This document shows, piece after piece, positions 1,865-38,830 of a DNA stretch of 64,000 nt. This DNA is from Macrostomum lignano. Lineage: Eukaryota. How positions within the stretch are numbered: the first letter of the stretch is position 1; every line of letters starts with the position of its first letter. The position numbers and the translations under genes were made by a program. The notes beneath the pieces are model-generated. The model was not told where the DNA came from. It worked only from the letters and a program-made list of their open reading frames with translations, and made no database searches. The stretch lies in the NCBI GenBank assembly GCA_002269645.1, contig NIVC01000495.1, positions 62,001 to 126,000 of the forward strand, written 5' to 3'.

Positions 1865-2370
1865 AGCTCTGAGGGTGAGGGAGTGACATTGAAGATCTGA
1901 GAGGGTGACGGAGTGACATGGGAGATCTGAGAGGGTGACGGAGTGACATGGGAGATCTGGGATGGTGACGGAGTGACATGGAAGATCTAGGATGGTGACG
2001 GAGTGACATGGAAGATCTAGGATGGTGACGGAGTGACATGGAAGATCTGGGATGGTGACGGAGTGACATTGAAGATCTAGGATGGTGGCGGAGTGACATT
2101 GAAGATCTGAGATGGTGACGGAGTGACATTGAAGATCTGAGATGGTGAAGGAGTGACATGGGAGATCTGAGAGGGTAACGGAGTGACATGGGAGATCTGA
2201 GCGGGTGACAGAGTGACATGGAAGATCTGGGATGGTGACGGAGTGACATGGGAGATCTGGGATGGTGACGGAGTGACATGGAAGATCTGGGATGGTGACG
2301 GAGTGACATGGGAGATCTGGGATGGTGACGGAGTGACATGGAAGATCTGGGATGGTGCCGGAGTGACCCA
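1865..2370. repeat. 30-bp minisatellite GATGGTGACGGAGTGACATGGAAGATCTGG, about 17 copies
   Basis: Direct reading; explains the periodic ORFs 1737-2339 and 2077-2490. Confidence 0.95.
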
Positions 2371-2810
2371 GTAGATCGAAGAGTGACAGAGTGTCCAGAA
2401 GGGGTCCGAGAGCAATCGTAAAAAGGTGTCAGTGACTTTAAAAGGCCAGCCAGGACGAATGACGCTGTAAGCAGGTGTAAATAGAAACAAAGAATTGTAT
2501 GCTACTTGAAGTAGCTATAGTAACTTCGGAATTTTAACTGTGAATCGACAGACCGGCTTTTAAAAAACTTTCTTTTCGATTCGCTGCAGTACAATAATAA
2601 TTAAATGGATCGAGACAAAAACTAGCTAAGCCAATATAGTTACTTCAAAGCTTTATAGCTTAGACGAATAACATCCTTAAACTGAATATTTAAATTTAAT
2701 TTAGCAGTAGGCTACATACAAACGTAAATGCGCGAGTTAAACAAAAATACTGTAAGCTTTACAGGCTGACTATAAATGACTCGCATTAGTGCGCGCGCAC
2801 TGCGGGCTAC

Positions 2811-4842
2811 TCAGTCAGCAGACGCGAGATTCTCCGCCAGCTCCGTCATCAGTTTCCGAATGCCATCGGCCGCGGCGGCGGCATCGGTGCCGCAGGCGGC
2901 CGCTTGCTCAGCCAGGCGCGGCCAGAGCTGCCGCAGCTCCGGCAAGTTCGGGTCGCAGCTCGCTGACGCCGAGACTGCGTCAGCGTCGCCGTCGGTGACT
3001 TCCACAACAAGAAGGTAGCCGCGGCACAGCACCTGGAAGCTGACCGTCTCGCGTTCCGTCTTTGACTGCGGCTGACTGGGCCGACTGTGGCGCGGATTCG
3101 CGATGCGGCAGTCGGCGGAGTCCCAGGCGACTGCGGGTGGCGGATGGAGGCTGGTGCACTGGGGAGAGAGCGGATGAAGGCTGGTGCACTGGGGGAGAGC
3201 GGATGGAGGCTGGTGCACTGGGGAGAGAGCGGATGGAGGCTGGTGCACTGGGGAGAGAGCGGATGGAGGCTGGTGCACTGAGGAGAGAGCGGATGGAGGC
3301 TGGTGCACCGGGGAGAGAGCGGATGGAGGTTGGTGCACTGGGGAGAGAGCGGATGGAGGCTGGTGCACCGGGGAGAGAGCGGATGGAGGTTGGTGCACTG
3401 GGGAGAGAGCGGATGGAGGCTGGTGCACTGGGAGAGAGCGGAGAGGCTGGTGCACTGAGGAGAGAGCGGATGGAGGTTGGTGCACTGGGAGAGAGCGGAG
3501 AGGCTGGTGCACTGAGGAGAGAGCGGAGAGGCTGGTGCACTGAGGAGAGAGCGGATGGAGGCTGGTGCACTGAGGAGAGAGCGGATGGAGGCTGGTTCAC
3601 TGGGGAGAGAGCGGATGGAGGCTGGGCCAATGCACTAGGAGAGGGCGGATGAAGGTGAAAACTCAAGATTTGATTATCAAAAAATTGATTATGGTGCTGA
3701 AATCAAGAAACGCTACTTACAATGTCCAGAAATTTCGGTGAGCACTTTAAAGAATGCGCCGAGTGAAGTTCCTTTGGCAATGGCAGACTGTTGCAGCTCT
3801 GGAAGAGATATTCAACCAGCTTTTGCTTTTAGACAGGAAGTTTCAGAAGCAACCATTTCATATACTAAAAATGGTTCTGACAATTTTTGTTCCATCGACC
3901 TGCCTTCCCGCTGCCTCAGGCAGTTCCTGAACCTGCCTTCCCGCTGTCTCAGTCAGTTCCTGAACCTGCCTTCCCGCTGTCTCAGTCAGTTCCTGAACCT
4001 GCCTTCCCGCTGCCTCAGTCAGTTCCTGAACCTGCCTTCCCGCTGCCTCAGGCAGTTCCTGAACCTGCCTTCCCGCTGTCTCAGGCAGTTCCTGAACCTG
4101 CCTTCCCGCTGCCTCAGTCAGTTCCTGAACCTGCCTTCCCGCTGTCTCAGGCAGTTCCTGAACCTGCCTTCCCGCTGTCTCAGGCAGTTCCTGAACCTGC
4201 CTTCCCGCTGCCTCAGTCAGTTCCTGAACCTGCCTTCCCGCTGTCTCAGGCAGTTCCTGAACCTGCCTTCCCGCTGTCTCAGACAGTTCCTGAACCTGCC
4301 TTCCCGCTGTCTCAGGCAGTTCCTGAACCTGCCTTCCCGCTGTCTCAGGCAGTTCCTGAACCTGCCTTCCCGCTGCCTCAGTCAGTTCCTGAACCTGCCT
4401 TCCCGCTGTCTCAGTCAGTTCCTGAACCTGCCTTCCCGCTGTCTCAGACAGTTCCTGAACCTGCCTTCCCGCTGTCTCAGGCAGTTCCTGAACCTGCCTT
4501 CCCGCTGCCTCAGGCAGTTCCTGAACCTGCCTTCCCGCTGCCTCAGTCAGTTCCTGAACCTGCCTTCCCGCTGCCTCAGGCAGTTCCTGAAGCTGCATCT
4601 CCACGCCCTCTCTTAAACGATGGATTGGAATATTAGTATAACAGCGCGAGTCCCCACGCACCCGACTGAGCATCCTGCAGCAATTTCTCATCGTCAGAAT
4701 TCATCAAACTGGTTGCCTTGTCAACAGAGCTGCAATTCTCAGCGGCTGCACGAAGCGACAGAAGCCGCAGGGTGCTGAGAACCAGATCCAGGTCCATTCC
4801 GACAGCTCCAACTGTTTCGATGCTTTTCGCAGTCAGAAGCAT
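2811..4842 (-). CDS. Three-exon gene of about 195 aa, uncertain product; weak resemblance to RWD-domain kinetochore proteins (CENP-P/Spc25-like)
   Basis: Exons 4842(or ATG 4797)-4662 (donor GTGCGT), 3798-3721 (acceptor TTCCAG, donor GTAAGT) and 3130-2811 (acceptor CCGCAG, TGA). Phases 1/1 are consistent and there are no stops. Product: MDLDLVLSTLRLLSLRAAAEN...ELQQSAIAKGTSLGAFFKVLTEISGHFAWDS...VSFQVLCRGYLLVVEV...SCDPNLPELRQLW...LASAD. The gene model is solid; the product call is speculative. Confidence 0.6.
3141..3640. repeat. 30-bp minisatellite GGATGGAGGCTGGTGCACTGGGGAGAGAGC, about 17 copies, intronic
   Basis: Direct reading; abuts the acceptor at 3131. Confidence 0.95.
3897..4590. repeat. 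33-bp minisatellite CCTGCCTTCCCGCTGTCTCAGGCAGTTCCTGAA, about 21 copies, intronic
   Basis: Direct reading; explains the ORFs 3738-4616, 3858-4691 and 3887-4636. Confidence 0.95.
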
Positions 4843-4921
4843 GAAATATTGATTTTAGACATTTTTAATATAACACTTACTACTCGTATAAGTAGTCTGC
4901 GTAAGCTGTTAACAAGTTTCA

Positions 4922-5086
4922 GCAAATTGTGTCACTCCTACATGGCTCCCAGAGGAACAGAAATGAGTCAGCAAGTGCAAATTGTGTCACTCCTACATGG
5001 CTCCCAGAGGAACAGAAATGAGTCAGCAAGTGCAAATTGTGTCACTCCTACATGGCTCCCAGAGGAACAGAAATGAGTCAGCAAGT
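4922..5086. repeat. 55-bp tandem triplication
   Basis: AAATTGTGTCACTCC... recurs at 4924, 4979 and 5034. Confidence 0.9.
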
Positions 5087-5617
5087 AAAGCACACCTGGG
5101 CTGCTAAATGAAGCACTGGCGGTCAAGCACAAAAACTGTAGAATTTACAGGTAGAAAACAGCATCGGAAACGCAAGCTTATATTTTATTAAACAGACAAT
5201 ATGATGACAGCTAAATGCCTGGCAACACAGATCAAAGTAGGAGACGCTGTGAACTGACATTATAACAGCACGGTGGAATCACGGTGCACTGAAACAGCAC
5301 AGCTTAACCCCCCCCCTCACGTCAACACTCAAGCAGCAACACAGATCGCACCTTGATAAATAAAATGCCATAAATAAAACGAATAAAACTAGGGACTTGT
5401 TTGGCAAACATAATAAAACAAATTTAACAGCATGAAAATAAGTAAAAAGGCTTGTACTAGCTTTTACTAGGTTTATAAACAGGATTATAAATGCGAGATA
5501 TCCCTTCAACTTGAATCACCTATATTTTTATTCTGTCATTGTTAGCAACCACTATATAATTCGGACAGCACATTAACTATTTATCCAGTTGGTCTTGCCA
5601 ACCTACCAGATACTCAC

Positions 5618-6345
5618 TGGGCCTGGCCCTATACAGTGATAGCCTGACATCCCTTGGCCCTATTACAGTTATAGCCTGACATCCCCTGGCCCTATACAGT
5701 GATAGCCTGACATCCCCTGGCCCTATACAGTGATAGCCTGACATCCCCTGGCCCTATACAGTGATAGCCTGACATCCCCTGGCCCTATACAGTGATAGCC
5801 TGACATCCCCTGGCCCTATACAGTGATAGCCTGACATCCCCTGGCCCTATACAGTGATAGCCTGACATCCCCTGGCCCTATACAGTGATAGCCTGACATC
5901 CCCTGGCCCTATACAGTGATAGCCTGACATCCCCTGGCCCTATACAGTGATAGCCTGGCATCCCCTGGCCCTATACAGTGATAGCCTGACATCCCCTGGC
6001 CCTATACAGTGATAGCCTGACATCCCCTGGCCCTATACAGTGATAGCCTGACATCCCCTGGCCCTATACAGTGATAGCCTGACATCCCCTGGCCCTATAC
6101 AGTGATAGCCTGACATCCCCTGGCCCTATACAGTGATAGCCTGACATCCCCTGGCCCTATACAGTGATAGCCTGACATCCCCTGGCCCTATACAGTGATA
6201 GCCTGACATCCCCTGGCCCTATACAGTGATAGCCTGACATCCCCTGGCCCTATACAGTGATAGCCTGACATCCCCTGGCCCTATACAGTGATAGCCTGAC
6301 ATCCCCTGGCCCTATACAGTGATAGCCTGACATCCCCTGGTCCTA
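5618..6345. repeat. 31-bp minisatellite CCCCTGGCCCTATACAGTGATAGCCTGACAT, about 23 near-identical copies
   Basis: Direct reading. Confidence 0.95.
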
Positions 6346-6484
6346 TAAAGTGTGGCTTTCTGATACCCCATGGCCCTCAAAAACAATAAAAGCCTCAGGT
6401 CTGTTGTTATTTTACAAAATCGAATAAAGCTGCCGATTGCAATGCAACCTCGGTTGCAGCTGGTCTGAGCCAATCAACGCCGAC

Positions 6485-7540
6485 TTATCGGCACCGGTCG
6501 CACAGGAAGTCGGTGGCCGCTAACTGATTCTCATCGTAGCCGGACAGCGAAGTGCAGGCGGCGTGGTACCAGGCCAAGCAGCAGTCGCAGCCAACCCACA
6601 GCAGGTTGGGGCCCAGCGGCAGGCTGCACTCGCCACCCAGAGCGCACGGGCCCTCGTCCGGCTGGGCGTCCGCAGCTGCGGCGGCAGCAGCGATGGCGGC
6701 CGCTGCATCGTCGCCGGCGGTCTCGGCTGCCGCTGTCACCAGGGCCACGGTTGTCGGCTGCGGCTGCTTCTGTTGGCGAGGCAGGCGCGACTTCCGACCG
6801 CCGCCACCGCGTCGATGTCGGCTTTTGCCGCTGCCCGGCGTTGCACCACCAGGTGTCCTCGGCGTCTTCGGCGTCTTCGGTGCGGCTGGCGGCGTCGCCG
6901 GAGGCAGTGCCAGCGAGTTCACCGGCAGCGGCGTGAGCGGCGCCAGAATGGCAGATTCGGGCGCTGGTGCCTCATCGCTAACCAGACGAGGCCGCTTAGC
7001 AGTCGGGTTCGCGTCGGCGCCAGCCTCCTGGTCGGGTGTCCCAGACAGCCTGCGCTTGGTGGTCCCGCCAACCGACTCCGCACTCGGCTCGGCTTCCGCT
7101 TTGGGCGTCGCCGCACGCTCAAAAATGAACTTCAACTCGGAGCGAAACGTGGGAACGGACTCCCCGTGCGGGATATTCACCCCGTTGCGATGCCCGAACA
7201 CCAGCACGTCTCCGGGCGTCAGTTTCACCAGCTTCATCTTTTCCACGCGAACAAAATTAACGTAGGTACCGTTGACGCTCAGGTCTTCGATTTCTATGCC
7301 ACCGTCGGCGCAGGGGTGGAGGCGGGCGTGCTGCCGGCTCGGCATCATGGACTGGGCGGTGGACTCCAGCACATAGTCTGGCCGCACGCTCTGGCTGCCG
7401 CGGCCCAGGAGGGTCGGCCGGTCAGCATAGATTGGCATCAGCTTAGGCGTGCGGCCATAGAAGGCCAGGTCGCTGACCCGGCGGAGCTGCCAGCGACAGG
7501 CTGGACTGCTGGGCTCGGCTGCCTGCGGGTGTGGAGACAT
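6485..7540 (-). CDS. TCF19: TCF19-like protein (N-terminal FHA domain, C-terminal PHD finger), single coding exon
   Basis: FHA motifs LLGRG, SRQHA, DLSVNGTYVN and LTPGDVLVFG. The PHD is CALGGECSLP...WVGCDCCLAWYHAAC...FLCDRCR. FHA + Pro/Ala linker + terminal PHD is the TCF19 architecture. First ATG is at 7540; the track's TTG at 7576 follows a TCTAG acceptor. Confidence 0.85.
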   Translation of the reverse strand: MSPHPQAAEPSSPACRWQLRRVSDLAFYGRTPKLMPIYADRPTLLGRGSQSVRPDYVLESTAQSMMPSRQHARLHPCADGGIEIEDLSVNGTYVNFVRVEKMKLVKLTPGDVLVFGHRNGVNIPHGESVPTFRSELKFIFERAATPKAEAEPSAESVGGTTKRRLSGTPDQEAGADANPTAKRPRLVSDEAPAPESAILAPLTPLPVNSLALPPATPPAAPKTPKTPRTPGGATPGSGKSRHRRGGGGRKSRLPRQQKQPQPTTVALVTAAAETAGDDAAAAIAAAAAAADAQPDEGPCALGGECSLPLGPNLLWVGCDCCLAWYHAACTSLSGYDENQLAATDFLCDRCR

Positions 7541-7615
7541 GCAGCAGCCATCTTCCTTGGATCTGGTTCTAGACAAATAAGGACTTATTTATTTAACATT
7601 TATTAGGAATTGAAA

Positions 7616-7825: not shown

Positions 7826-10800
7826 TTTTTAAAGAAAAATCTAAAAAAATATTTTTGTTGTTTTTGATTCTTATTAAGTTTATATTAAAATATAAATATA
7901 TAGTTATAATAATCATTGATAGTAATAGTTGTACATTAAACAGCTAAAGCCCACCATGAATATCCAAACTTGGTAATAGAGAGGTAAGTGTCCATCTAAG
8001 AGTGTTCTGACCCTATGCGCTTGCCTCTTATTTAGGGCCATCTAACTCTTCTATCCATATTTGCATTATTTTGGCTCACTAGACTTTAAAGATTTACCAT
8101 CTCTCTGGATCTATATTATTGCCTTAAGATATAGGAAAAACATGTTACGTGAAGACTAATAAATTGTAATAGGGTATTATTAAAGAAAAAATGTGAATAT
8201 TCATTTTTGCTTTTGTTTTCTTGGCTTTCCTCAAATAATTTACTTTATTGCAACTCTATTTTTTTGTAATCACTTATTTCTATTTTAGCATATAAACTAT
8301 AATAGGTTTATCTTTTGCTATTAATTTTTTATTAATTTTGCTATTCACTTTGCTTTGCTTTTGGATTTTACAGTTTATTAAGCCCTTTTAACTATTAATC
8401 CATAGTTTGGAAGGCAACATGTATTCCTGGCATACAACAAGGGTCTTAATATTTTTTAGCATACCTCAAGCTATACCTTGGCATACAAGACATAGTAGAT
8501 ACATTGTGTCAAATGATAAATTTTTTGTATTGACGCACAAACCTAACATATAAATGAGGTCACTCATTCATCACTCACATTGAACCTCAACCTCATATTG
8601 GACCTTATTGAGGTCACTCAATAAGGTCTCATCATTTTTTCTGGCAATAAACCTGGCATACACTATTGCACAATCCAAACTATAGCTATTAATGCATTAA
8701 ATTTTTATATTTATCAATTTTTGCTTGAAGTAGGTCTACTTTTAACTTTGAAGTTTGATTTGTTATTGCAGATAGCATGCAGCTATTGATCTAAAGATAA
8801 ATATAATTTTTTTAACCAAAAACTAAGTGAAAGAACAATATTTAACCCAAATTTCTATTTATCAAAATGTCTATAGGCCTATTTAAATATTGAAATATCT
8901 CATTAGTCCCCATAGAGAATGCCAATGGCAATCCCTATGGTATGGCTAAAAATACAGATTATAGGGCCTAACCAAAGGAGCACATAGGCCTAGTTCTAAT
9001 TTTCTAAGCCCATGTCTAGGGCCTATTGAAATTCATTAATTTTATATAACATAGACATATAGCCTAGTCTAGTTTGTTAGCAAGACTTTTACTTCCTCCT
9101 ATCCATTATTAAAGAATTTGAGTTTAAAGGAAGGAAGCCATATTATTGTGTTCATTTAATTCTTTTTAATTAGGCCTACCGCCTGCCTAGTAGGCTTACA
9201 CACACTACTAACAACTACAAGCCTGTACAGGGCCCTAAGCATAGCATATAGCATATATATTTCTTTTTTCAGACTTCCCTGTCCACTACATTGTATTATG
9301 CTATGTAATTGTAACTGTAGGCCTACAGTTGTATCTATCTAGTCTAGGTCCCTGCCGCCCCTAATTAAATCGAAAGTGCCTTTGAATGAATCATTATAAA
9401 ACTATTTATATTGCCTGTCGATTATTATTTTTTTAAAATTATAATATACATTATAATTGACAAATGAGATACCACAATTTTTAGGGCTCCCGCATACTAA
9501 CTACTGAATTCACCGGCACTTGGGTTCACCGGATTTTTAACTTTATTTTTAAGGCTTAAAAATATACATAATCGATAGCGCAAGTAAAACTAGAGATGCG
9601 CCTAGATTTTTGGCTCTGCGCGTTGCCCCTGGACATCAGGAGGGCGATTTTTGTTATTTTTTGGGGGGTGAAACCGGCGGTGAACCCAATAAATCCTTCC
9701 AGAGAGCTGAAAACCTGTCATGCAATATTTCAAAGCAAAATATAGGCAGATTTCGACGTGCGCATAAAATTTCAGCGTTGCGCGTTGCTCCTGAACTGCA
9801 GGAGAACGTTTTTTTGTTAAATTCCGGTGTTGAATGACTGCCGCTGAACTCCGCGGTGAACGAAATTAAGTGCGTTTCCCGAGTCGAAAAATAGTAAATT
9901 TTCCTATTAAAAAAGTTATCAAATTAAAGTTTTATCACTTTCATCAGCATTTTTGCACTCAATTTTGTGTTGACTGTTAAGCTATTTATTTTAATGCAAA
10001 GCGAAAACATTAAAAAATATTTCGAACTGCGAGTCTTTATTGCGCAACGTGGCAGCAGGCAGTTACAGCGCACTTGCGCATAAAAAATACATTATATTTA
10101 TACGCCGTGTGGTATTTTTGTGGCCATACTTAATAATGAAGCCTTTTATGCTGTTTTACTTCCTATATTTTTAGATTTATTTTTCAATTACGTCTTGAAA
10201 CATGCAGTCAAAGTGTTAATATCAGTATAGGCAATAAAATAAAATTGGCATTTCTTGGCTTGATGCTTTTTACAACTTGTTAAAACCTCTATTTTAATAT
10301 TTCTTCTCTTCTAATAAGTCAAATTATAAACATAATATCTATTTAAGATTCCATAGTGCTTTTCCATTAAGTATAAATTCAATTATATCAGGCAGGCACT
10401 TAGTATACTTTTATAAAATAATAACTATAACATGCAATAAAAATATTGACTATACTAGCCTATTTAATTACTTGTAATTTTATGTAATATTACTAGCCAA
10501 TAAATATTTTTATATTTGATTTCATTGTAATTATAAAAAATTTAAAAAATTCTGTATATTTATAACATTGTTGACTCATAAAATTATTTCTTGTTTTTTC
10601 TCCTAACCATAATTAATATTTAAAAAAATATACATCAAGAATTATTAATTTTTCTTGATTTGTAAATAAAAATATTACCCTGCAATTTTCAATATTTTTC
10701 ATGTATTTTATGTAAAATGCGCAATTTCATGTGTTTTTTGTGTTTCCATCAGTTTAGCTTGGGCTAACTAGAAACTGCAGACTGACAGAATGCATTTCTT

Positions 10801-11250
10801 TCTCCGGGATATTGCTTCTTTCTAAGTTAAAGAGACCAATATGCTCATTAGGAGTAGCTTTATGCCCAGAAGCACAGTACGCACAATAAATTGTGTTTTT
10901 TGTGTTTCCATCAGTTTAGCCTGTTATTGGGCTATCTAGAAACTGAAGACTGACAGAATGTATTCCTTTTTACGGATATTCCTCGTGTTGCTGATATGTT
11001 GACATCAATGTTGTCACAAGAAATTTTTTGTCGTGCCATTGTCAAAATTGGCAATGTTGTTGCAACAACATTGATACATCTTTACTACTTTACTATGAGT
11101 AGCGCAGCGAGAGTTGTGAATGATATAAAGTAAGGCATAAAATTGTTAAACCAGAATTATTTTAGCTCTGAACATACCTGCTATTCTAATTCAAAAGAAT
11201 GGAAACGTGTTTTAAAATTTTTAATTAGTAATATATTTGAGGTTTACAAT

Positions 11251-11860
11251 TCGAAGTTTTTCTCACGAATCAACCTCAACCAGTCGTATCTACAGCTGCC
11301 TCTGCACGATGACGCCAAGAATCTGACCTGCTTCTACACCGAATTCGGCCTCTACCGTTTCAGACGCATGCCGTTCGGCATCAGCTCGGATCCGGCGGCC
11401 TTCCAGAAGCTCGTCGGCAAGATCCTCCAAGGCATCAGAGGCGTCGTTCACTATCAAGACGACATCGCCGTTCACGCCGGTACTGAAGCTGAGCACGAAA
11501 GTCGCGTACTTCAGGTACTGGACAAGCTGCTGCAGCATCGAGTAACCGTCAACCTCAAGAAGTGCAACCTTCAAGGCGTCGGAGATCGAGTTCGTTGGAC
11601 ACCGCGTCAGCGCAGCGGGAATTCAACCTCTCCAGTCGCACACCGAGTCCGTATCGGGACTTAAGGCACCCACCAATACGGCAAAGTTAGCCTCATTCCT
11701 TGGCTTTGCAAAGTTCTTCCAGTTCTACATCAAGAACCTGTCTCACGTCGCCGAGCCGCTAACAGCGCTCCTGCGCAAGGACACGCCATGGAACTGGGAC
11801 GCAAAATGCGAGACGGCCTTCAGCGAAGCGAAGCGTCTCATCTCATCAGCACCGTGCCTC
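11251..11860 (+). pseudogene. Ty3/Gypsy reverse transcriptase fragment (cargo)
   Basis: FSRINLNQSYLQLPL...GLYRFRRMPFGISSDPAAFQ...HYQDD...NLKKC. After a +1 shift near 11569 it continues FKASEIEFVGHRVSAAGI...LASFLG...AEPLTALLRKDTPWNW. Confidence 0.9.
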
Positions 11861-11884
11861 ATCTCATCCTTCCCGCTTTCAGCT

Positions 11885-12715
11885 ATGGCGTCATCCGCCT
11901 CTTTCAACCCCGCTGAAGCCGGGGCCCCGGCAACTCCGGCCGGTGACTCTGGCACGAGCGCCGCCCCACTGGGGGCAGATGGGCTTGCCGCCGGCTCGGC
12001 CGGTGACATGCCCGCACGCGCAACCGGGCCCTCCGCTGAAGCCCGACGCGCCCGCAACCAACGCCGCAACGAGCGGCGACGGCGACTGCGGGCCGACCAC
12101 CGGCGGAGGGGGAACCTAGGGAGGACGAGGCTGCTGTTGGCCCGAAAGGAGCCACAGCAACCCCTGCCCCCAAGGATACAACCCCCGCTGGTGAGCTGGG
12201 AAACCGCCGCACTAATTACGCCTCAAAGGTCAAGCTCCAACCGGCGGTCATCGTCTTCGGGGAAGAGCAAGACCTCACGGCCGACGAGCTCGACAGTGCC
12301 TGGCGCACCATCGATGCTGCGCTCATCGACCAGCTCCTGGCGGGCCGCCCTGTGAGCGTGGTCAAGTCCGCCAAGACCGACGGCTGCATCTTCATCTGGT
12401 GCAGCTCGGAGGAGAGCAGCCGCAGTCTACGCGAGCTTCTGCCAAAGCTGAACTGGCCCAAGAAGCTCGGCAAGCTCGTCTTCGCCAGCGCTTTCGCGTC
12501 TGGATCCCGGCCGGCAGTGCCATTAAGTCCGGAGATCAGCTTAGGCAAATATTGCTAAAGCTGCACCCTGACCTTGAGGTCAACGGGCTCCTACACCACG
12601 CCACTTCCCGCAAGGAGAAGGGGGCTACGGTGATCCTAGGGCTCTCTAATGACTGGGCTGAGCACTTGCCGCCTAAGTCCACAATCCATATTGAAGGCTC
12701 TTCATATTGCTTGTT
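11885..12715 (+). pseudogene. Non-LTR retrotransposon ORF1 fragment (R1/LOA-like, DUF4780-like) (cargo)
   Basis: Ala/Gly- then Arg-rich N-terminus. Frameshifted blocks follow: KLQPAVIVFGEE...LDSAWRTID...KTDGCIFIWC and LRQILLKLHPDL...GATVILGLS. These are homologous by eye to the LINE relic at 61600-62721. Confidence 0.6.
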
Positions 12716-13282
12716 CTGGTTCTAGAACCAGAACCAATTTGTAAAGTATAACTTTTTGTCTCCTAAACTAGAGGGATATTAGTGCTTTAAAATTGTGATT
12801 ATTAAATGGCAATAGCCAAGAAGAAAGTGAAAAATAGTGCGAATTGAGGCTGTTAAGGCAGTCAAACATTCAACAAAGTTAAATAGTTATACTGCTTTTT
12901 TTCTTGGAAATCCGAACCGATTCTGGTTCGAGAATCGATTGCCGTGAAGAGGCTCTTGGTCTGACTCAGCTGACCATCCTCCGTTGCGAGGAGCGGAAAG
13001 CTGATGAAGCCAAGAATGCCAAGGCTTCCGAAACCGGAACTGGGGCCTAGGCTCCTCCGGCAAAGAAGCCGAGGCAAACGGCCGATCCTATGCCTGGTAG
13101 GGCAGTTCGCGCTGCTGAAACCGGAAATCGCAATCGCAGACCCGCCAGGAGCACCCGGAGGTCCGGCCTGATCCAGCGCGCGCTGGACCAGGCCAAGAAC
13201 CTTCGGGCGTATCGTGAGCGGGCCCGCGCTTCTCGCGCTTCACCCCAACAGCCAGAAGGACAGGCTGTAAGCTATCGAAGAT

Positions 13283-13545
13283 ATCGAAGATGCTGTTCTT
13301 GATCTCGTCGTTGTCAGGTTTGCTGTAGTTGCAGCGCTTCACGAGCTGGCGTAGAGAACCCATGAACTGGTCGAAGTCCTCCGCTTCTCCTTGCATTCTG
13401 GTGCGCAGCTGATAGCTTTCAAATGTCTCGTTGGAGAGAGGCTGGCAGTAGACATCAAACTTCTTGATCAAATCCTCGTACTTTTTCACTTCCGCAGTAG
13501 GAAACGTGGCATAGACATCTTGTCCATCTGGTCCTAGAGCTGTCG
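13283..13545 (-). pseudogene. Ty3/Gypsy gag fragment, antisense to the RT fragment (cargo)
   Basis: ALGPDGQDVYATF...KKYEDLIKKFDVYCQPLSNETFESYQLRTRMQGEAEDFDQFMGSLRQLVKRCNY; this pattern is typical of Gypsy gag N-terminal regions. Confidence 0.8.
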
Positions 13546-15914
13546 CTTCTTGAACATCAACTCAACTCAAACGCCGACAAAAAGCAGCATTCGCAGGTAG
13601 AGGACCTTGCGCTTCGAAAACAGTGTACGCATCGTTAATAAACGCGAGTAAAAAGGGAAAGTGGGTACCGAATTTATTGTGTTACTGTGATTTTAGCGAT
13701 TAAGACGTTGGTATGAAGCAGATTCGTCTCTTTAACTTGGAAAGAAACAGTATCCCTGAAAAAGGAATACATTCTGTCAGTCTTCAGTTTCTAGATAGCC
13801 CAATAACAGGCTAAACTGATGGAAACACAAAAAACACAATTTATTGTGCGTACTGTGCTTCTGGGCATAAAGCTACTCCTAATGAGCATATTGGTCTCTT
13901 TAACTTAGAAAGAAGCAATATCCCGGAGAAAGAAATGCATTCTGTCAGTCTGCAGTTTCTAGTTAGCCCAAGCTAAACTGATGGAAACACAAAAAACACA
14001 TGAAATTGCGCATTTTACATAAAATACATGAAAAATATTGAAAATTGCAGGGTAATATTTTTATTTACAAATCAAGAAAAATTAATAATTCTTGATGTAT
14101 ATTTTTTTAAATATTAATTATGGTTAGGAGAAAAAACAAGAAATAATTTTATGAGTCAACAATGTTATAAATATACAGAATTTTTTAAATTTTTTATAAT
14201 TACAATGAAATCAAATATAAAAATATTTATTGGCTAGTAATATTACATAAAATTACAAGTAATTAAATAGGCTAGTATAGTCAATATTTTTATTGCATGT
14301 TATAGTTATTATTTTATAAAAGTATACTAAGTGCCTGCCTGATATAATTGAATTTATACTTAATGGAAAAGCACTATGGAATCTTAAATAGATATTATGT
14401 TTATAATTTGACTTATTAGAAGAGAAGAAATATTAAAATAGAGGTTTTAACAAGTTGTAAAAAGCATCAAGCCAAGAAATGCCAATTTTATTTTATTGCC
14501 TATACTGATATTAACACTTTGACTGCATGTTTCAAGACGTAATTGAAAAATAAATCTAAAAATATAGGAAGTAAAACAGCATAAAAGGCTTCATTATTAA
14601 GTATGGCCACAAAAATACCACACGGCGTATAAATATAATGTATTTTTTATGCGCAAGTGCGCTGTAACTGCCTGCTGCCACGTTGCGCAATAAAGACTCG
14701 CAGTTCGAAATATTTTTTAATGTTTTCGCTTTGCATTAAAATAAATAGCTTAACAGTCAACACAAAATTGAGTGCAAAAATGCTGATGAAAGTGATAAAA
14801 CTTTAATTTGATAACTTTTTTAATAGGAAAATTTACTATTTTTCGACTCGGGAAACGCACTTAATTTCGTTCACCGCGGAGTTCAGCGGCAGTCATTCAA
14901 CACCGGAATTTAACAAAAAAACGTTCTCCTGCAGTTCAGGAGCAACGCGCAACGCTGAAATTTTATGCGCACGTCGAAATCTGCCTATATTTTGCTTTGA
15001 AATATTGCATGACAGGTTTTCAGCTCTCTGGAAGGATTTATTGGGTTCACCGCCGGTTTCACCCCCCAAAAAATAACAAAAATCGCCCTCCTGATGTCCA
15101 GGGGCAACGCGCAGAGCCAAAAATCTAGGCGCATCTCTAGTTTTACTTGCGCTATCGATTATGTATATTTTTAAGCCTTAAAAATAAAGTTAAAAATCCG
15201 GTGAACCCAAGTGCCGGTGAATTCAGTAGTTAGTCTCCCGCATAGAAAGTGAATCTTAACGATTATCGGGTTCCAAATTTGATTTTTCCGGGAAGTAAAA
15301 CAGTAAAACTAAATTTAGACCTGCCGAACGTATGATTATTCATCAAGACATCTTTGAAAAACTGATAAGTACAAGTCCAGAAGTTTAAATAGTAAAGTAC
15401 GAGTGTAAATACATGTATCCTATATTAGACGTGTAAACATGCAAATTTATTTTTTCAGAAACTATAAAATTCAAGTGGTGAGCCTCTCACCAGCAGAATC
15501 AATCGTTAAATTGATTGATTCATTAGTTAATTGATGCTAAATTTATATACGTGCATATTTTCTGTATATGTAATTAATACATAGTAAGTAGTGATCTAGC
15601 ATGCTGTATATTCCTCAAGACTTGCCGGAGTCGGAATTTCTGTTTGTTTGAATCGACATTGAAAAATAATTGACTTGGAATCGACATTATTTTGATGCTT
15701 ATTCCAGCTGTGGATGCTCGAGTTTAATTGGCATCTGTCTTCAAAGTCCACTAGTGGAGAAATTGAAGTCCTTTGTTATGTGCACCAGCAACTCCCTGCA
15801 ATGTATGCTTGTGTACATGCATGATCTACATGTAAATGAGAGGGCAAATATGGCTGCAAAATTGATTTTAGAAAAGCTAACACAAACCATATGTAGTTTA
15901 AAAAAATTAGGTTG

Positions 15915-16069
15915 GGGTCGCTTCACAAGCTCGAAATTTCACAAACTCGAAAGTGTAAAAGGGTTATAGTTCAATAAAGTACACATGCTTGTTGTACTGA
16001 GCTTCGATGGCTTTTTTGATTTTTTTTAAATTTCGAGGTTGTGAAATTTCGAGCTTGTGAAAGCAACCC
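15915..16069. mobile_element. Small MITE (about 155 bp) with about 40-bp TIRs
   Basis: GGGTCGCTTCACAAGCTCGAAATTTCACAAACTCGAAA versus TTTCGAGGTTGTGAAATTTCGAGCTTGTGAAAGCAACCC; TSD not resolved. Confidence 0.75.
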
Positions 16070-16880: not shown

Positions 16881-17890
16881 GCAACAGCTACAGAGAGGGG
16901 ATGCCAGCTACAGAGGGGACGCCAGCTACAGAGGGGACGCCAGCTACAGAGGGGATGCCAGCTACAGATGGGAGGCCAGCTACAGAGGGGATGCCAGCTA
17001 CAGAGGGGATGCCAGCTACAGAGGGGATGCCAGCTACAGAGGGGATGCCAGCTACAGAGGGGATGCCAGCTACAGAGGGGATGCCAGCTACAGAGGGGAT
17101 GCCAGCTACAGAGGGGATGCCAGCTACAGAGGGGATGCCAGCTACAGAGGGGATGCCAGCTACAGAGGGGATGCCAGCTACAGAGGGGATGCCAGCTACA
17201 GAGGGGATGCCAGCTACAGATGGGAGGCCAGCTACAGAGGGGATGCCAGCTACAGAGGGGATGCCAGCTACAGAGGGGATGCCAGCTACAGAGGGGATGC
17301 CAGCTACAGAGGGGATGCCAGCTACAGAGGGGATGCCAGCTACAGAGGGGATGCCAGCTACAGAGGGGATGCCAGCTACAGAGGGGATGCCAGCTACAGA
17401 GGGGACGCCAGCTACAGAGGGGACGCCAGCTACAGAGGGGACGCCAGCTACAGAGGGGCGCCAGCTACAGAAAGGGGTTGCCAGCTACCGACGGTATGCC
17501 AGCTACAGAGGAGATGCCAGCTACAGAGGGGACGCCAGCTACAGAGGGGACGCCAGCTACAGAGGGGACGCCAGCTACAGAGGGGATGCCAGCTACAGAG
17601 GGGACGCCAGCTACAGAGGGGACGCCAGCTACAGAGGGGATGCCAGCTACAGAGGGGACGCCAGCTACAGAGGGGACGCCAGCTACAGAGGGGCGCCAGC
17701 TACAGAAAGGGGCTGCCAGCTACCGACGGTATGCCAGCTACAGAGGAGATGCCAGCTACAGAGGGGATGCCAGCTACAGAGGGGATGCCAGCTACAGAGG
17801 GGATGCCAGCTACAGAGGGGATGCCAGCTACAGAGGGGATGCCAGCTACAGAGGGGGTGCCAGCTACAGAGGGGATGCCAGCTACAGAGG
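16881..17890. repeat. 18-bp minisatellite GCCAGCTACAGAGGGGAT, about 56 copies
   Basis: Direct reading; open in three frames (QRGCQL / YRGDAS / MPATEG), so the long ORFs are artefacts. Confidence 0.95.
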
Positions 17891-18359
17891 GGGTTGAGAG
17901 GCGCTTTCAGAATTTTGTACAAACAACTTTTTGTTGAATTTGTGTGCAGAAAGTTTGAAATGGGTTGCCTCATAAAGACTATACTCTTAAATTGCCAAAA
18001 CCAGCGAGGCTGGTTCAGTTCGGCTCAAGCAAAGACAATCGGTGTGTGAGACGGCGAAAATGACTTTGCAGACGAATTGAATCAACCCAGCCAACTCTAA
18101 GGCTGCTCCATTCAGTTGAGCCAATTTCCCGTGCCAATCTCTTGTGAACTCGCTGATACTCGTAGATGCCAGAGGGGGGATTCCCAAACAGCGATTAGCA
18201 TCGCTTGCTCCGGAACTACAGACTGACTCGCTTGCCAATCAAGAGTAAGTAAGGTCAATGTTTGTATGCATTCAGACTGGATGACAACAGCTCACAGTCA
18301 GCTCACTGTTGATGCACACAAACTCCTTGACAGCCTGAGTCAGCTCACGAGTCTACGAC

Positions 18360-19560
18360 ACTTGACTGCCGCAATTTGACTGCCAGTGACATTTGACTGC
18401 CAGTGACATTTGACTGCCAGTGCCATTTGACTGTCAGGGACATTTGACTGCCAGTGACATTTGACTGCCGCATTTTGACTGCCAGCGACATTTGACTGCC
18501 AGTGACAATTGACTGTCAGTGACATTTGACTGCCAGTGACACTTGACTCCCAGTGACATTTGACTGCCAGTGACATTTGACTACCAGTGACATTTGTCTG
18601 CCAGTGACATTTGACTGCCAGTGACATTTTGACTGCCGCAATTTGACAGCCAGTGACATCTGACTGCCAGTGACATTTGACTGCCATTGACATTTGACTG
18701 TCAGTGACATCTGACTCCCAGTGACATTTGACTGCCAGTGACATTTGACTGCCAGTGACATTTGTCTGCCAGTGACATTTGACTGCCAATGACATTTTGA
18801 CTGCCGCAATTTGACAGCCAGTGACATTTGACTGCCAGTGACATTTGACTGCCAGTGACATTTGTCTGCCAGTGACATTTGACTGCCAGTGACATTTTGA
18901 CTGCCGCAATTTGACAGCCAGTGACATCTGACTGCCAGTGACATTTGTCTGCCAGTGACATTTGACTGCCAGTGACATTTGACTGCCAGTGACATTTGAC
19001 TGCCAGTGACATTTGACTGCCAGTGACATTTGACTGCCAGTGATATTTGACTGCCAGTGACATTTGACTGTCAGTGACATTTGACTTCCAGTGACATTTG
19101 ACTGCCAGTGACATTTGACTGCCGCAATTTGACAGCCAGTGACATCTGACTGCCAGTGACATTTGTCTGCCAGTGACATTTGACTGCCAGTGACATTTGA
19201 CTGCCAGTGACATTTGACTGCCAGTGACATTTGACTGCCAGTGACATTTGACTGCCAGTGATATTTGACTGCCAGTGACATTTGACTGTCAGTGACATTT
19301 GACTTCCAGTGACATTTGACTGCCAGTGACATTTGACTGCCGCAATTTGACTGCCAATGACATCTGACTCCCAGTGACATTTGACTGCCAGTGACATTTG
19401 ACTGCCAGTGACATTTGACTGCCAGTGACATTTGACTGCCAGTGACATTTGACTGCCAGTGATATTTGACTGCCAGTGACATTTGACTGTCAGTGACATT
19501 TGACTTCCAGTGACATTTGACTGTCAGTGACATTGGACTGCCAGTGACATTTGACTGCCA
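18360..19560. repeat. 17-bp minisatellite GTGACATTTGACTGCCA, about 70 copies
   Basis: Direct reading. Confidence 0.95.
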
Positions 19561-20924: not shown

Positions 20925-21645
20925 CAGCTGCTGCTTCTACCACCACTCTCAGCCACCTGCTCTCTACCATCACTCTCATCCACCTGCTCTCTACCGCCAC
21001 TCTCATTTATCTACCCGCTCTCTACCATCACTATCATCTATCTACCCGCTCTCTACCACCACTCTCATCCACCTGCTCTCTACCCCACTCTTATCTATCT
21101 AACCGCTCTCTACAAACACTCCCATCTATCTACCCGCTCTCTAGCACCACTCTCATCTATCTACCGCTCTCTAGCACCACTCTCATCTATCTACCGCTCT
21201 CTAGCACCACTCTCATCTATCTACCGCTCTCTAGCACCACTCTCATCTATCTACCGCTCTCTAGCACCACTCTCATCTACCCGCTCTCTACCGCCACTCT
21301 CATCTACCTCTCTACCTCTCTAACATCACGCTCTCTACCACCACTCTCATTTATCTACCCGCTCTCTACCGCCACTCTCATCTACCCGCTCTCTACCATC
21401 ACTATCATCTATCTACCCGCTCTCTACCGCCTCTCCTACCAATCTACCCGCTCTCTACCGCCTCTCCTACCAATCTACCAGCTCTCTACCGCCTCTCCTA
21501 CCAATCTACCCGCTCTCTACCGCCTCTCCTACCAATCTACCAGCTCTCTACCGCCTCTCCTACCAATCTACCCGCTCTCTACCGCCTCTCCTACCAATCT
21601 ACCCGCTCTCTACCGCCTCTCCTACCAATCTACCAGCTCTCTACG
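20925..21645. repeat. Composite pyrimidine-rich minisatellite (30-bp then 31-bp units) ending just before the PDFR acceptor
   Basis: CTAGCACCAC recurs every 30 bp (21141-21260); TCTCTACCGCCTCTCCTACCAATCTACCCGC recurs every 31 bp (21421-21645). Confidence 0.9.
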
Positions 21646-21688
21646 GACACTCACCGCTGGCACCGCCCCTCCCGCCCCCCAATTCCAG

Positions 21689-36920: not shown

Positions 36921-37834
36921 AATTTGATGAAAAAATTCTACATTAACAGTGTCGACACTGGGATTTTGTTCTGCAAGGTCGAGGTCCAGCCTAGCGACGA
37001 GCTACTCTGCTTTTGCCGTCATTCATGCTGACACCCCGTCAAGCTAGTCAGTTCGGTGTGCTTCTAGTCGTTTCATTCTGTTGTGCGTCGCTTGGCTTAG
37101 ATCTGAGTTTGAAGGCTGTTGTAGTAGCGCCTTCAGAGAGCGCTTTTTTAGCTTGTAGTCACAATCGCTTATGAGCATGCGCCCCAGGACCACTAGAAGT
37201 TACTATCGTATAACAGCGTTAACTTCTAGCGGTTCTTGGATAAGTAATAAGCAAGTCTGCAATGAACTTTTATTGTTTTTTTTTCAATTTTCGAGTGGAA
37301 GCTTGAGGTCTGAAGACAAGCAAGGCGAGACAGTTGAATTGTGGCTGAATGCATACACGTGAATTGCAGAGCCAGCCGACCAGATTAACCTGCCGAGTGT
37401 CCCAGTTCTTAAATCGAAAGGAAATGCTAAACTAGCGGAATTTGTTGACCAAGTTTTCCAGAAGAAGTTTTCTTATCGAGGGGCCTTTTGTGATGGAACT
37501 TTCCGTTCGCATTGGCAGCCAGTCACGCCGCTGAGGTCAACGCGACAGGGCGTTTCGCTGTAACGGTTTTGATAGACATGGTGGCAGCTCGGGCACGTGA
37601 GCCGCTTTTGCCGATTCTCCCGCTATAAAAGTCTGCACTGGAAGGACAGGTTGAGGAATTAAACTGAACTTCTACGGAAACTATATTTAGAAATAAGCTG
37701 CGAGCTACTAAATCTGCACTGCATGGTACAGACAGTGGAAAGGATGGACTGCTTTTATGATTATCTTCACCATGCTTTACTGCCCGAGACAACTTTGGGG
37801 CGGAGAAGAGTACGAGTAGCCAGACTCAGAGAGG

Positions 37835-38830
37835 GATTTGATAGGCGAAGATAGGAACTTGATAGGGCAAGAGCGGGATTTGATAGGTGAAGATAGGAAT
37901 TTGATAGGGCAAGAGAGGGATTTGATAGGTGAAGATAGGAACTTGATAGGGCAAGAGAGGGATTTGATAGGGCAAAAGAGAGATTTGATATGGCAAGAGA
38001 GGGATTTGATAAGGCAAATGAGATTTGATATGGCAAGAGAGGGATTTGATAAGGCAAATGAGAGATTTGATATGGCAAGAGAGGGATTTGATAAGGCAAA
38101 TGAGAGATTTGATACGAGCGTATGGCAAGAGAGGGATTTGATAAGGCAAATGAGATTTGATATGGCAAGAGAGGGATTTGATAAGGCAAATGAGAGATTT
38201 GATATGGCAAGAGAGGGATTTGATGGGGCAAATGAGAGATTTGATATGGCAAGAGAGGGATTTGATAAGGCAAATGAGATTTGATATGGCAAGAGAGGGA
38301 TTTGATAAGGCAAATGAGAGATTTGATATGGCAAGAGAGGGATTTGATAAGGCAAATGAGAGATTTGATATGGCAAGAGAGGGATTTGATGGGGCAAATG
38401 AGAGATTTGATATGGCAAGAGAGGGATTTGATAAGGCAAATGAGATTTGATATGGCAAGAGAGGGATTTGATAAGGCAAATGAGAGATTTGATATGGCAA
38501 GAGAGGGATTTGATAAGGCAAATGAGAGATTTGATATGGCAAGAGAGGGATTTGATAAGGCAAATGAGATTTGATATGGCAAGAGGGATTTGATAAGGCA
38601 AATGAGAGATTTGATATGGCAAGAGAGGGATTTGATAAGGCAAATGAGAGATTTGATATGGCAAGAGAGGGATTTGATAAGGCAAATGAGAGATTTGATA
38701 TGGCAAGAGAGGGATTTGATGGGGCAAATGAGAGATTTGATATGGCAAGAGAGGGATTTGATAGGGCAAGAGAGGGATTTGATAGGGCAAATGAGAGATT
38801 TGATAGGGCAAGATAGGAACTTGATAGGTG
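37835..38830. repeat. 21/42-bp minisatellite GATTTGATATGGCAAGAGAGG-GATTTGATAAGGCAAATGAGA
   Basis: Direct reading; two alternating 21-mers. Confidence 0.95.

What the first reader, a model, noticed from the sequence alone, without database searches (positions are those of the whole stretch)
9487..15243. Transposase-less foldback/Mutator element packaging a collage of retrotransposon fragments (animal Pack-MULE-like)
Seen: 1476-bp inverted arms, an exact 9-bp TSD, and 2787 bp of cargo. In order, the cargo is an AT spacer, Gypsy RT (+), LINE ORF1 (+), an AT spacer, an unidentified GC-rich Arg/Ala fragment (12930-13280) and Gypsy gag (-). Established: 9-bp TSDs with long TIRs mark MULEs, and Pack-MULEs capture host fragments mainly in plants. 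Inference: this is a recently mobilised animal Pack-MULE whose recognisable cargo is all retroelement pieces, not host genes. It could be one member of a family that samples the genome's retroelements.
Basis: partly seen in the sequence, partly recalled or inferred. Interest (0 to 1): 0.88.

Follow-up and report, generated by a model that had tools for sequence, protein, structure and literature searches.

The report
Young foldback transposon carrying retroelement debris
This is a real and very recent insertion, in the flatworm Macrostomum lignano, of a 5.7-kb DNA transposon with no transposase gene, 1.5-kb inverted arms, and a middle filled with dead pieces of retrotransposons; it is a tidy example of a known kind of element, not a new kind.

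Summary
The arms (9496-10971 and 13759-15234) are 1476 nt and 100% complementary, and the 9-bp repeat CTCCCGCAT flanks them exactly. The window is Macrostomum lignano (assembly Mlig_3_7). A near-identical second contig of that assembly carries the same locus without the element and with one copy of CTCCCGCAT. It differs by 1 substitution in 4.75 kb of flank. This is a precise empty site, so the element is a genuine, very young insertion and not an assembly foldback. The cargo labels are right and can be refined. There is a Ty3/Gypsy RT piece, then a nearly whole LINE ORF1. The "unidentified Arg/Ala" piece is the tail of that ORF1, separated from the rest by a 262-bp MITE-like insert. A Gypsy gag piece lies in reverse. 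All pieces are truncated and broken, so they were dead freight when the element last moved. Mutator/Foldback membership fits the 9-bp TSD, the long TIRs and the subterminal GTTCACCG repeats. It is unproven, because I found no transposase partner and no second copy, and AcademH also makes 9-10-bp TSDs. The "Pack-MULE" label fails on its defining feature, since no host-gene cargo is present. Nothing supports a family that samples retroelements. The closest known cases are fly FB4/Ssk-FB4 and the non-autonomous Aedes Muta elements. Interest is modest.

The parts
9487..9495 (.). Left copy of the target-site duplication, CTCCCGCAT
   Evidence: The empty-site contig L001 has this 9-mer once.
9496..10971 (+). 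Left inverted arm (long TIR), 1476 nt. The match continues to 10978 at 99.9%.
9496..9519 (+). Terminal tip ACTAACTACTGAATTCACCGGCAC. It occurs only twice in the window, at the two outer ends.
   Evidence: 0 matches expected in shuffles; no inner copies.
9508..9861 (.). Subterminal cluster of GTTCACCG/CGGTGAAC motifs (3 exact and 2 one-mismatch per arm), plus two degenerate repeats spaced 162 bp apart (9597-9652 and 9759-9814). These are candidate transposase-binding sites.
   Evidence: Six of the 8 exact GTTCACCG sites in 64 kb lie in the outer 370 bp of the two arms.
10719..10978 (+). Inner end of the left arm: about 1.6 units of a 162-168-bp tandem repeat. The second unit is cut off at about 10978, and this is the left breakpoint of the cargo.
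10979..11247 (.). AT-rich spacer of unknown origin (about 32% GC). It has no homology to anything found.
11248..11875 (+). Ty3/Gypsy reverse-transcriptase fragment: the C-terminal two thirds of RT plus the start of the RNase H-like linker. It has one frameshift near 11572 and is truncated at both ends.
   Evidence: Pfam RVT_1, E = 5.7e-16. All homologues have the RT-RNaseH-integrase order. tblastn coordinates.
11885..12692 (+). LINE ORF1, N-terminal and central part. It starts at its ATG about 10 bp after the RT piece ends. It has two frameshifts (about 12170 and about 12487).
   Evidence: P0035 gives E = 3.4e-105 at 73% identity. P0035 sits directly upstream of an APE+RT ORF2 on L004. P0036 is an M. 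lignano protein with ORF1-APE-RT-RNaseH.
12693..12954 (.). A 262-bp AT-rich, MITE-like insert that splits the LINE ORF1. It is flanked by GAAGGCTCTT and GAAGAGGCTCTT and has TTCTNGAACCAGAA palindromic motifs near both ends.
   Evidence: Protein alignments (P0036 aa 276, P0037 aa 216) and the DNA alignment to L004 (1544 then 1553) are contiguous across it.
12955..13269 (+). It has an in-frame stop at 13048-13050 and is truncated before the ORF1 end.
   Evidence: It is 91.7% identical over 60 aa to M. lignano protein A0A1I8IR31 (P0043).
13286..13543 (-). Ty3/Gypsy gag (capsid-region) fragment, in reverse orientation.
   Evidence: Many hits to query positions 385-476. These include the N-termini of RT-RNaseH-integrase polyproteins P0060, P0085 and P0096.
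13544..13670 (.). Spacer of unknown origin between the gag piece and the arm repeat.
13671..13758 (-). Extra, diverged (about 80%) part of the arm's 165-bp repeat array. It is kept only on the right side.
13759..15234 (-). Right inverted arm (long TIR), 1476 nt, 100% complementary to the left arm.
15235..15243 (.). Right copy of the target-site duplication, CTCCCGCAT.

Best explanation
This is a non-autonomous, foldback-type cut-and-paste DNA transposon of Macrostomum lignano. It most likely belongs to the Mutator/Foldback group. It inserted very recently, about 1.9 kb upstream of an FHA/PHD-domain exon. A transposase encoded elsewhere in the genome would bind the identical 24-nt tips and the GTTCACCG repeats just inside them, excise the whole 5739-bp unit, and insert it at a 9-bp staggered cut, which produces the CTCCCGCAT duplication. 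The 2.7-kb centre is passive freight. It is a mosaic of a Gypsy RT piece, a LINE ORF1 (already interrupted by a small MITE-like insert) and an inverted Gypsy gag piece. The mosaic replaced the element's original middle at an earlier donor site, probably by template switching or faulty gap repair that began in the repetitive inner end of the left arm. It has been carried along since. Shown: the insertion, the TSD, the empty site, the youth of the insertion, the lack of a transposase, the cargo identities, and that the cargo was already dead when carried. Inferred: the superfamily, mobilisation in trans, and how the cargo was acquired.
For: Arms are 1476 nt and 100% complementary. The TSD is exact. 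The paralogous or allelic contig L001 has a precise empty site with one TSD copy. Its flanks differ by 1 substitution and one 1-bp indel in 4.75 kb. A more diverged homeologue, L002, is also empty. The terminal tip occurs only at the two outer ends. GTTCACCG is concentrated in the outer 370 bp of both arms. The arms have no ORF longer than 94 aa, arm ORFs have no protein homologues, and no transposase family appeared among the families listed for the window's ORFs. The cargo is retroelement-derived and broken: at least 3 frameshifts, 1 stop and 1 internal insert; all pieces are truncated, with no LTR or poly-A ends. That much decay cannot have happened since an insertion whose flanks are about 0.02% diverged. 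The left cargo breakpoint lies inside the 165-bp tandem repeat, while the right side keeps a further unit. This matches the repeat-associated template switching proposed for FB4 (PMC8277862). A 9-bp TSD, TIRs over 100 bp and subterminal repeats are typical MULE features, and animal MULE derivatives carry heterogeneous inserts (PMC5225508).
Against: No autonomous partner and no second copy were found, so family status and superfamily rest on structure alone. The 9-bp TSD is not unique to MULEs: AcademH makes 9-10 bp, and Merlin about 8 bp (PMC10045372). The 1.5-kb arms are much longer than typical MULE TIRs. They are mostly unique sequence, not the short tandem repeats of Drosophila FB arms. 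No parental locus for the cargo mosaic was found, so capture as a single block is inferred from parsimony. Perfect arm identity could owe something to assembly polishing or to gene conversion within the element.
Confidence: 0.72

Rival explanations
1. The mobile element is the same, but it belongs to another superfamily that also makes roughly 9-bp duplications (AcademH, or less likely Merlin) and is mobilised by that group's enzyme.
For: AcademH generates 9 or 10-bp TSDs and occurs in animals, and Merlin generates about 8 bp (PMC10045372). No MULE transposase was found in the window. The TIR tip ACTAAC... was not compared with any reference library.
Against: Very long TIRs with subterminal repeats and heterogeneous inserts are the documented pattern for animal MULE/FB elements (PMC5225508, PMC8277862). 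Merlin's usual TSD is 8 bp, not 9.
Confidence: 0.22
2. The cargo was not captured as a block. Instead, retroelements and a MITE inserted one by one into the loop of an ancestral copy and were then whittled down by deletions, and the element stayed mobile throughout.
For: At least one clean nested insertion exists: the 262-bp insert splits the LINE ORF1 with no loss of ORF1 sequence and has short flanking direct repeats. Loops of foldback elements tolerate extra DNA.
Against: None of the three retroelement pieces keeps a terminus (LTR, poly-A) or a TSD. RT and LINE ORF1 abut within about 10 bp, and gag is inverted. At least three insertions plus four or more deletions would be needed. None of this can postdate the present insertion.
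Confidence: 0.25
3. This is a composite or macro-transposon: two separate copies of a shorter element in inverted orientation moved together with the genomic DNA that lay between them.
For: Drosophila FB pairs are known to mobilise intervening DNA (general knowledge). The cargo looks like ordinary repeat-rich genomic DNA.
Against: The 24-nt tip occurs only at the two outer ends, even allowing 3 mismatches. Each arm therefore lacks an inner terminus and is not a complete element on its own. The arms end inside a tandem repeat, not at a terminus.
Confidence: 0.05
4. This is an assembly artefact: a PacBio foldback or chimeric read produced a false palindrome.
For: The arms are exactly identical. 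The assembly (Canu on PacBio data) is known to be difficult and redundant (PMC5730564).
Against: An artefact would not create an exact 9-bp duplication of a sequence that is single-copy at a precise empty site on another contig. It also would not produce asymmetric inner arm ends or 2.7 kb of unique centre.
Confidence: 0.03

Closest known systems
Drosophila melanogaster Foldback element FB4 and its derivative Ssk-FB4 (Tan et al. 2021, PMC8277862)
   Same: Non-autonomous. Long inverted arms (about 700 bp in FB4, 1476 bp here). TSDs of 9-10 bp. Repetitive inner arm regions prone to rearrangement. Foreign DNA carried between the arms and moved by transposition. Polymorphic, young insertions.
   Different: Ssk-FB4 carries an almost complete host gene and is multicopy with distinct TSDs. 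Here the cargo is dead retroelement debris and only one copy is known. The arms here are mostly unique sequence, not arrays of short repeats. There is no sequence similarity, and the host is a flatworm.
Non-autonomous derivatives of Muta MULEs in Aedes aegypti (Liu and Wessler 2017, PMC5225508)
   Same: An animal host. TSDs of 8-9 bp. TIRs over 100 bp with short subterminal repeats. Derivatives share only the TIR and subterminal regions and carry heterogeneous internal sequences. There is evidence of recent activity.
   Different: Muta TIRs are about 145-150 bp with 12-15-bp tandem repeats, and their autonomous partners and transposase are known and tested. Here the arms are ten times longer and no partner has been found.
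Plant Pack-MULEs / Pack-TYPE elements (PMC5861414, PMC8903248)
   Same: MULE-like ends and a 9-bp TSD around acquired, rearranged foreign fragments from more than one source and in mixed orientation. No transposase.
   Different: Pack-MULEs are defined by host-gene fragments with identifiable parental genes. The cargo here is entirely TE-derived and no parent is known.
AcademH DNA transposons (Kojima 2020, cited in PMC10045372)
   Same: TSDs of 9-10 bp; present in animals.
   Different: Nothing else could be compared. The AcademH paper was not available and no transposase or helicase partner was found here.

Membership tests
Mutator-like elements (MULE / MuDR superfamily, including Foldback) | An autonomous family member with the same termini encodes a MuDR/IS256-type DDE transposase | not testable with these tools
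   There was no access to the whole M. lignano genome by DNA. No transposase family appeared among the families listed for the window's ORFs (only the top 25 of 61 families were shown). The tip is absent from all other loci fetched.
Mutator-like elements (MULE / MuDR superfamily, including Foldback) | Target-site duplication of 8-10 bp | tested here: met
   A 9-bp CTCCCGCAT duplication, verified against a precise empty site.
Mutator-like elements (MULE / MuDR superfamily, including Foldback) | Long TIRs (over 100 bp), often with subterminal short repeats | tested here: met
   A 1476-nt perfect TIR. GTTCACCG occurs 3 times exactly per arm within the outer 370 bp.
Pack-MULE / Pack-TIR | The internal region consists of captured host (non-TE) gene sequence with a parental copy elsewhere | tested here: not met
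   Every identifiable internal piece is TE-derived: Gypsy RT, LINE ORF1, Gypsy gag and a MITE-like insert. No parental locus was found.
Pack-MULE / Pack-TIR | Non-autonomous element bounded by TIRs and a TSD | tested here: met
Pack-MULE / Pack-TIR | The same chimera is present at several loci with different TSDs (multicopy Pack elements) | not testable with these tools
   Only about 115 kb of M. lignano DNA was reachable, and it holds one copy.
Drosophila-type Foldback (FB) elements | Arms built largely of short tandem repeats | tested here: inconclusive
   There are only about 1.6-2 units of a 162-168-bp repeat at the inner ends and two degenerate 162-bp-spaced units near the tip. Most of the arm is unique and partly 16-20% GC.
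Drosophila-type Foldback (FB) elements | Long inverted arms around a variable loop, with a 9-10-bp TSD | tested here: met
   The arms make up 51% of the element and the TSD is 9 bp. Variability of the loop among copies could not be tested.
AcademH | A 9-10-bp TSD, with a partner that encodes a transposase plus helicase | tested here: inconclusive
   The TSD length fits (PMC10045372). The partner could not be tested.
MITE | Small size (usually under 800 bp) and high copy number | tested here: not met
   The element is 5739 bp and only one copy was seen. The nested 262-bp insert at 12693-12954 may itself be a MITE.

The most novel reading that the evidence does not exclude
M. lignano harbours a currently active Mutator/Foldback-type family whose long-armed, non-autonomous members repeatedly pick up retroelement fragments and drop them next to genes. 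That would be the first Pack-MULE-type family seen in an animal reference genome. It could also be a native mobile vector, or a mobile source of transposon-derived small-RNA targets, in the one flatworm where transgenesis works.
Probability: 0.07. Interest if true: 0.6.

Novelty: new member of a known kind. Interest (0 to 1): 0.3.

Why it matters
The main value is evidence of very recent DNA-transposon activity in Macrostomum lignano. The insertion is present on one of two contigs whose flanks are 99.98% identical. That implies a working transposase somewhere in the DV1 genome. This matters for genome stability in a model used for transgenesis and regeneration, and possibly as a native transposon tool. 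The locus is also a clean, datable example showing that foreign DNA inside a long-TIR element can be moved as freight. It supports the view from flies and mosquitoes that animal MULE/FB-type elements shuffle sequence much as plant Pack-MULEs do. The cargo itself is junk, and nothing points to a host function.

Tried and rejected
(1) Other copies by way of proteins. A concatenate of all arm ORFs searched against 5.8 billion proteins gave nothing. Exact look-ups of the 75-aa arm ORF and the 156-aa cargo ORF gave nothing. (2) Other copies by way of DNA. The 24-nt tip gave 0 hits in metagenome contigs and the 21-nt tip gave 0 hits in viral contigs. A gapped double-motif pattern gave 3 metagenome hits, but these are GC-rich contigs with no further similarity to the element, so they are chance matches. 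The tip is absent from all other fetched loci. (3) Near-identical parents of the cargo. The word-indexed search found only distant Gypsy RTs, the best at 65% over 110 aa. The exhaustive search found the LINE ORF1 family and gag relatives but no donor locus. P0043 has no contig on record. (4) Pfam on the ORF1 and gag pieces gave no hit, so I identified them through homologues and their neighbours. (5) Rfam on the whole window gave no family. (6) I rejected the idea that the window is heterochromatin or a piRNA-cluster-like TE graveyard. Apart from this element, the window holds host exons (FHA/PHD, WD40, CID-CREPT and others) and many minisatellites, and the only RT match is the one inside the element. 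(7) I considered and rejected reading 12693-12954 as an intron. It lacks GT at its start, and LINE ORF1s have no introns. (8) The AcademH paper (PMC7165386) is not held.


Full report
OBSERVATION. The repeat finder reports inverted arms at 9496-10971 and 13759-15234. They are 1476 nt, 100% complementary, and 2787 nt apart. Gapped BLAST extends the match to 1484 nt at 99.9%. Reading the ends shows CTCCCGCAT at 9487-9495 and again at 15235-15243, directly abutting the arm tips. The 24-nt tip ACTAACTACTGAATTCACCGGCAC occurs only at the two outer ends, even allowing three mismatches, and none is expected in shuffles.

SOURCE AND THE DECISIVE CONTROL. An FHA/PHD-domain exon lies at 6485-7576 on the minus strand. 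It led to protein P0001 and to assembly GCA_002269645.1. Papers identify that assembly as Macrostomum lignano Mlig_3_7, from the DV1 line. It was built with Canu on PacBio data and has 180 Mb of redundant duplicated blocks (PMC5730564). Cluster members of P0001 gave two more loci. BLAST shows that the window is contig NIVC01000495.1, since L003 matches it at 100%. L001 (NIVC01001548.1) is a second, near-identical copy of the locus. It aligns up to window position 9496 and resumes at 15235. Read base by base, L001 is ...TTTTTAGGG CTCCCGCAT AGAAAGTG..., with one copy of the 9-mer and no element. In 3.1 kb of left flank and 1.66 kb of right flank the two contigs differ by one substitution and one 1-bp indel. 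A more diverged homeologue, L002, is also empty. The 5739-bp unit is therefore a true insertion with a 9-bp target-site duplication. It arose after two almost identical haplotypes or duplicate chromosomes separated. An assembly foldback is excluded for the junctions.

THE VEHICLE. The arms have no ORF above 94 aa, and their ORFs have no homologue among 5.8 billion proteins. The outer 370 bp of each arm holds three exact GTTCACCG/CGGTGAAC motifs. These six account for six of the eight exact sites in the whole 64 kb. There are also two degenerate repeats spaced 162 bp apart. Further in, the arm becomes very AT-rich, at 16-20% GC. It ends in a 162-168-bp tandem repeat. The left arm stops about 100 bp into the second unit, at about 10978. 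The right side keeps that unit whole plus the start of a third, at 13671-13758 and about 80% identity. No inner copy of the tip exists, so each arm is not an element in its own right. This is the anatomy of a non-autonomous long-TIR, foldback-type, cut-and-paste transposon. The tips and subterminal repeats are the likely transposase-binding sites, and that role is inferred.

THE CARGO. From left to right the cargo reads as follows.
- 10979-11247: an AT-rich spacer of unknown origin.
- 11248-11875 (+): an RT fragment. Pfam RVT_1 gives E = 5.7e-16 over the C-terminal two thirds of the model. There is one frameshift near 11572. All its homologues have the Ty3/Gypsy order RT-RNaseH-integrase, which agrees with Gypsy dominance among M. 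lignano LTR elements (PMC12801592).
- 11885-12692 (+): a LINE ORF1 beginning at its ATG.
- 12693-12954: a 262-bp AT-rich insert.
- 12955-13269 (+): the Arg/Ala-rich continuation of the same ORF1.
- 13286-13543 (-): a gag fragment.
- 13544-13670: a spacer of unknown origin.

The exhaustive HMMER search supports the ORF1 call. P0035 is 73% identical (E = 3.4e-105) and spans both halves. On its metagenome contig it is followed by an ORF2 with APE endonuclease and RT domains. P0036 and P0043 are M. lignano UniRef proteins. P0036 has the ORF1-like N-terminus followed by APE, RT and RNase H. P0043 is 91.7% identical over 60 aa.

Protein alignments (P0036 residue 276, P0037 residue 216) and the DNA alignment to L004 are contiguous across 12693-12954. 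That stretch is therefore a discrete nested insertion. It is flanked by GAAGGCTCTT and GAAGAGGCTCTT and has TTCTNGAACCAGAA motifs near both ends, so it is MITE-like.

The gag piece matches the N-terminal region of RT-RNaseH-integrase polyproteins. The ORF1 has two frameshifts and an in-frame stop at 13048-13050. No fragment retains an LTR, a poly-A tail or a TSD of its own.

TIMING ARGUMENT. The flanks are about 0.02% diverged from the empty copy and the arms show 0 differences in 1476 nt. The cargo, by contrast, carries at least three frameshifts, a stop, a nested insert and six truncated ends. That damage cannot have accumulated since this insertion. The mosaic was already on board, and already dead, when the element last transposed. 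Whether the mosaic was copied in as one block or built by earlier nesting and deletion cannot be settled without other copies or a donor locus. One-block capture could have happened by template switching or abortive gap repair starting in the repetitive inner arm, as proposed for FB4 in PMC8277862. I favour capture on parsimony, but one true nesting event, the 262-bp insert, is visible.

SUPERFAMILY. A 9-bp TSD, TIRs over 100 bp and subterminal repeats are the typical MULE features. Aedes MULE families have 8-9-bp TSDs, and their non-autonomous derivatives have heterogeneous inserts that include host-gene fragments (PMC5225508). Drosophila FB4 has 9-10-bp TSDs and TIRs of about 700 bp. Tan et al. 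regard it as a MULE and regard Ssk-FB4 as a Pack-MULE (PMC8277862). TSD length is not unique to MULEs, however. AcademH makes 9-10 bp, Merlin 8 bp, and MuDR 4-10 bp (PMC10045372). No transposase family appeared among the families listed for the window's ORFs. I also could not search the rest of the genome by DNA. Membership is plausible, at about 0.55-0.6, but not shown.

THE 'PACK-MULE' LABEL AND NOVELTY. Pack-MULEs and Pack-TIRs are defined by captured host sequence, and here everything identifiable is TE-derived, so the defining feature is not met. The mechanism is likely the same. Tan et al. found no Pack-MULE in 100 animal reference genomes. But animal MULE/FB derivatives with foreign inserts were already described. 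Non-autonomous DNA transposons with TE-derived or unrelated centres are commonplace; that last point rests on my own knowledge. I found no second copy in the window, in L001-L003, or in the metagenome and viral collections. A family that samples retroelements is therefore unsupported. I file this as a new member of a known kind. Its main interest is as evidence of very recent DNA-transposon activity in a flatworm model.

CONTEXT. Outside the element the window is gene-bearing DNA with many minisatellites, not a TE graveyard. It has FHA/PHD, WD40 and CID-CREPT exons and others. It has many arrays of 10-68-bp units, including a 7-kb array of TCTAAGCCTC. It has no Rfam family. The only RT match among its ORFs is the one inside the element.

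Noticed in passing
window 12693-12954: A 262-bp AT-rich insert splits the LINE ORF1 cleanly. It is flanked by GAAGGCTCTT and GAAGAGGCTCTT and has TTCTNGAACCAGAA palindromic motifs near both ends. It is probably a small MITE nested inside the cargo. No other copy is present in the window.
   Followed up: partly
window 1-20751 versus L001 (NIVC01001548.1) and L002 (NIVC01001256.1): The Mlig_3_7 assembly holds this locus three times. There are two copies with about 99.98% identical unique sequence, which differ in minisatellite copy number and in this insertion. A third copy is a homeologue at about 85-96% identity. The protein database lists the window's FHA protein under the other contig.
   Followed up: partly
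window 27044-34048: A 7-kb array (about 708 copies, 88% matches) of the 10-bp unit TCTAAGCCTC with a very strong strand skew (GC skew about -0.6).
   Followed up: no
window 1874-6352, 16894-19560, 20936-26201, 35008-35567, 37828-38837, 41802-42589, 46356-46852, 48081-50282, 51894-52144: Numerous minisatellites with units of 12-68 bp. They create long spurious ORFs that hit low-complexity Pfam families (Cornifin, Collagen, DotD, Clathrin-link).
   Followed up: partly
window 6485-7576 (-), 48452-49012 (-), 52748-53857 (-): Host exons are present: an FHA + PHD-finger protein, a WD40 repeat protein, and an RPRD1-like protein with CID + CREPT domains. The ORF survey also showed nuclear-receptor zf-C4, 7tm_2 and eIF2B-epsilon matches that I did not place. 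The element sits about 1.9 kb upstream of the FHA/PHD exon.
   Followed up: partly
L004 (JGI metagenome 3300038379, contig Ga0394873_0103931): An environmental metagenome contig carries an intact LINE (ORF1 of 357 aa overlapping an APE+RT ORF2). It is about 76% identical in DNA to the cargo's LINE ORF1, which suggests DNA of a related flatworm in that sample.
   Followed up: no
window 15922-16061: A 39-nt inverted repeat (90% complementary, 62-nt loop) built from a 16-bp unit TTCACAAACTCGAAAT lies about 700 bp to the right of the element. It may be a small hairpin or a MITE remnant.
   Followed up: no
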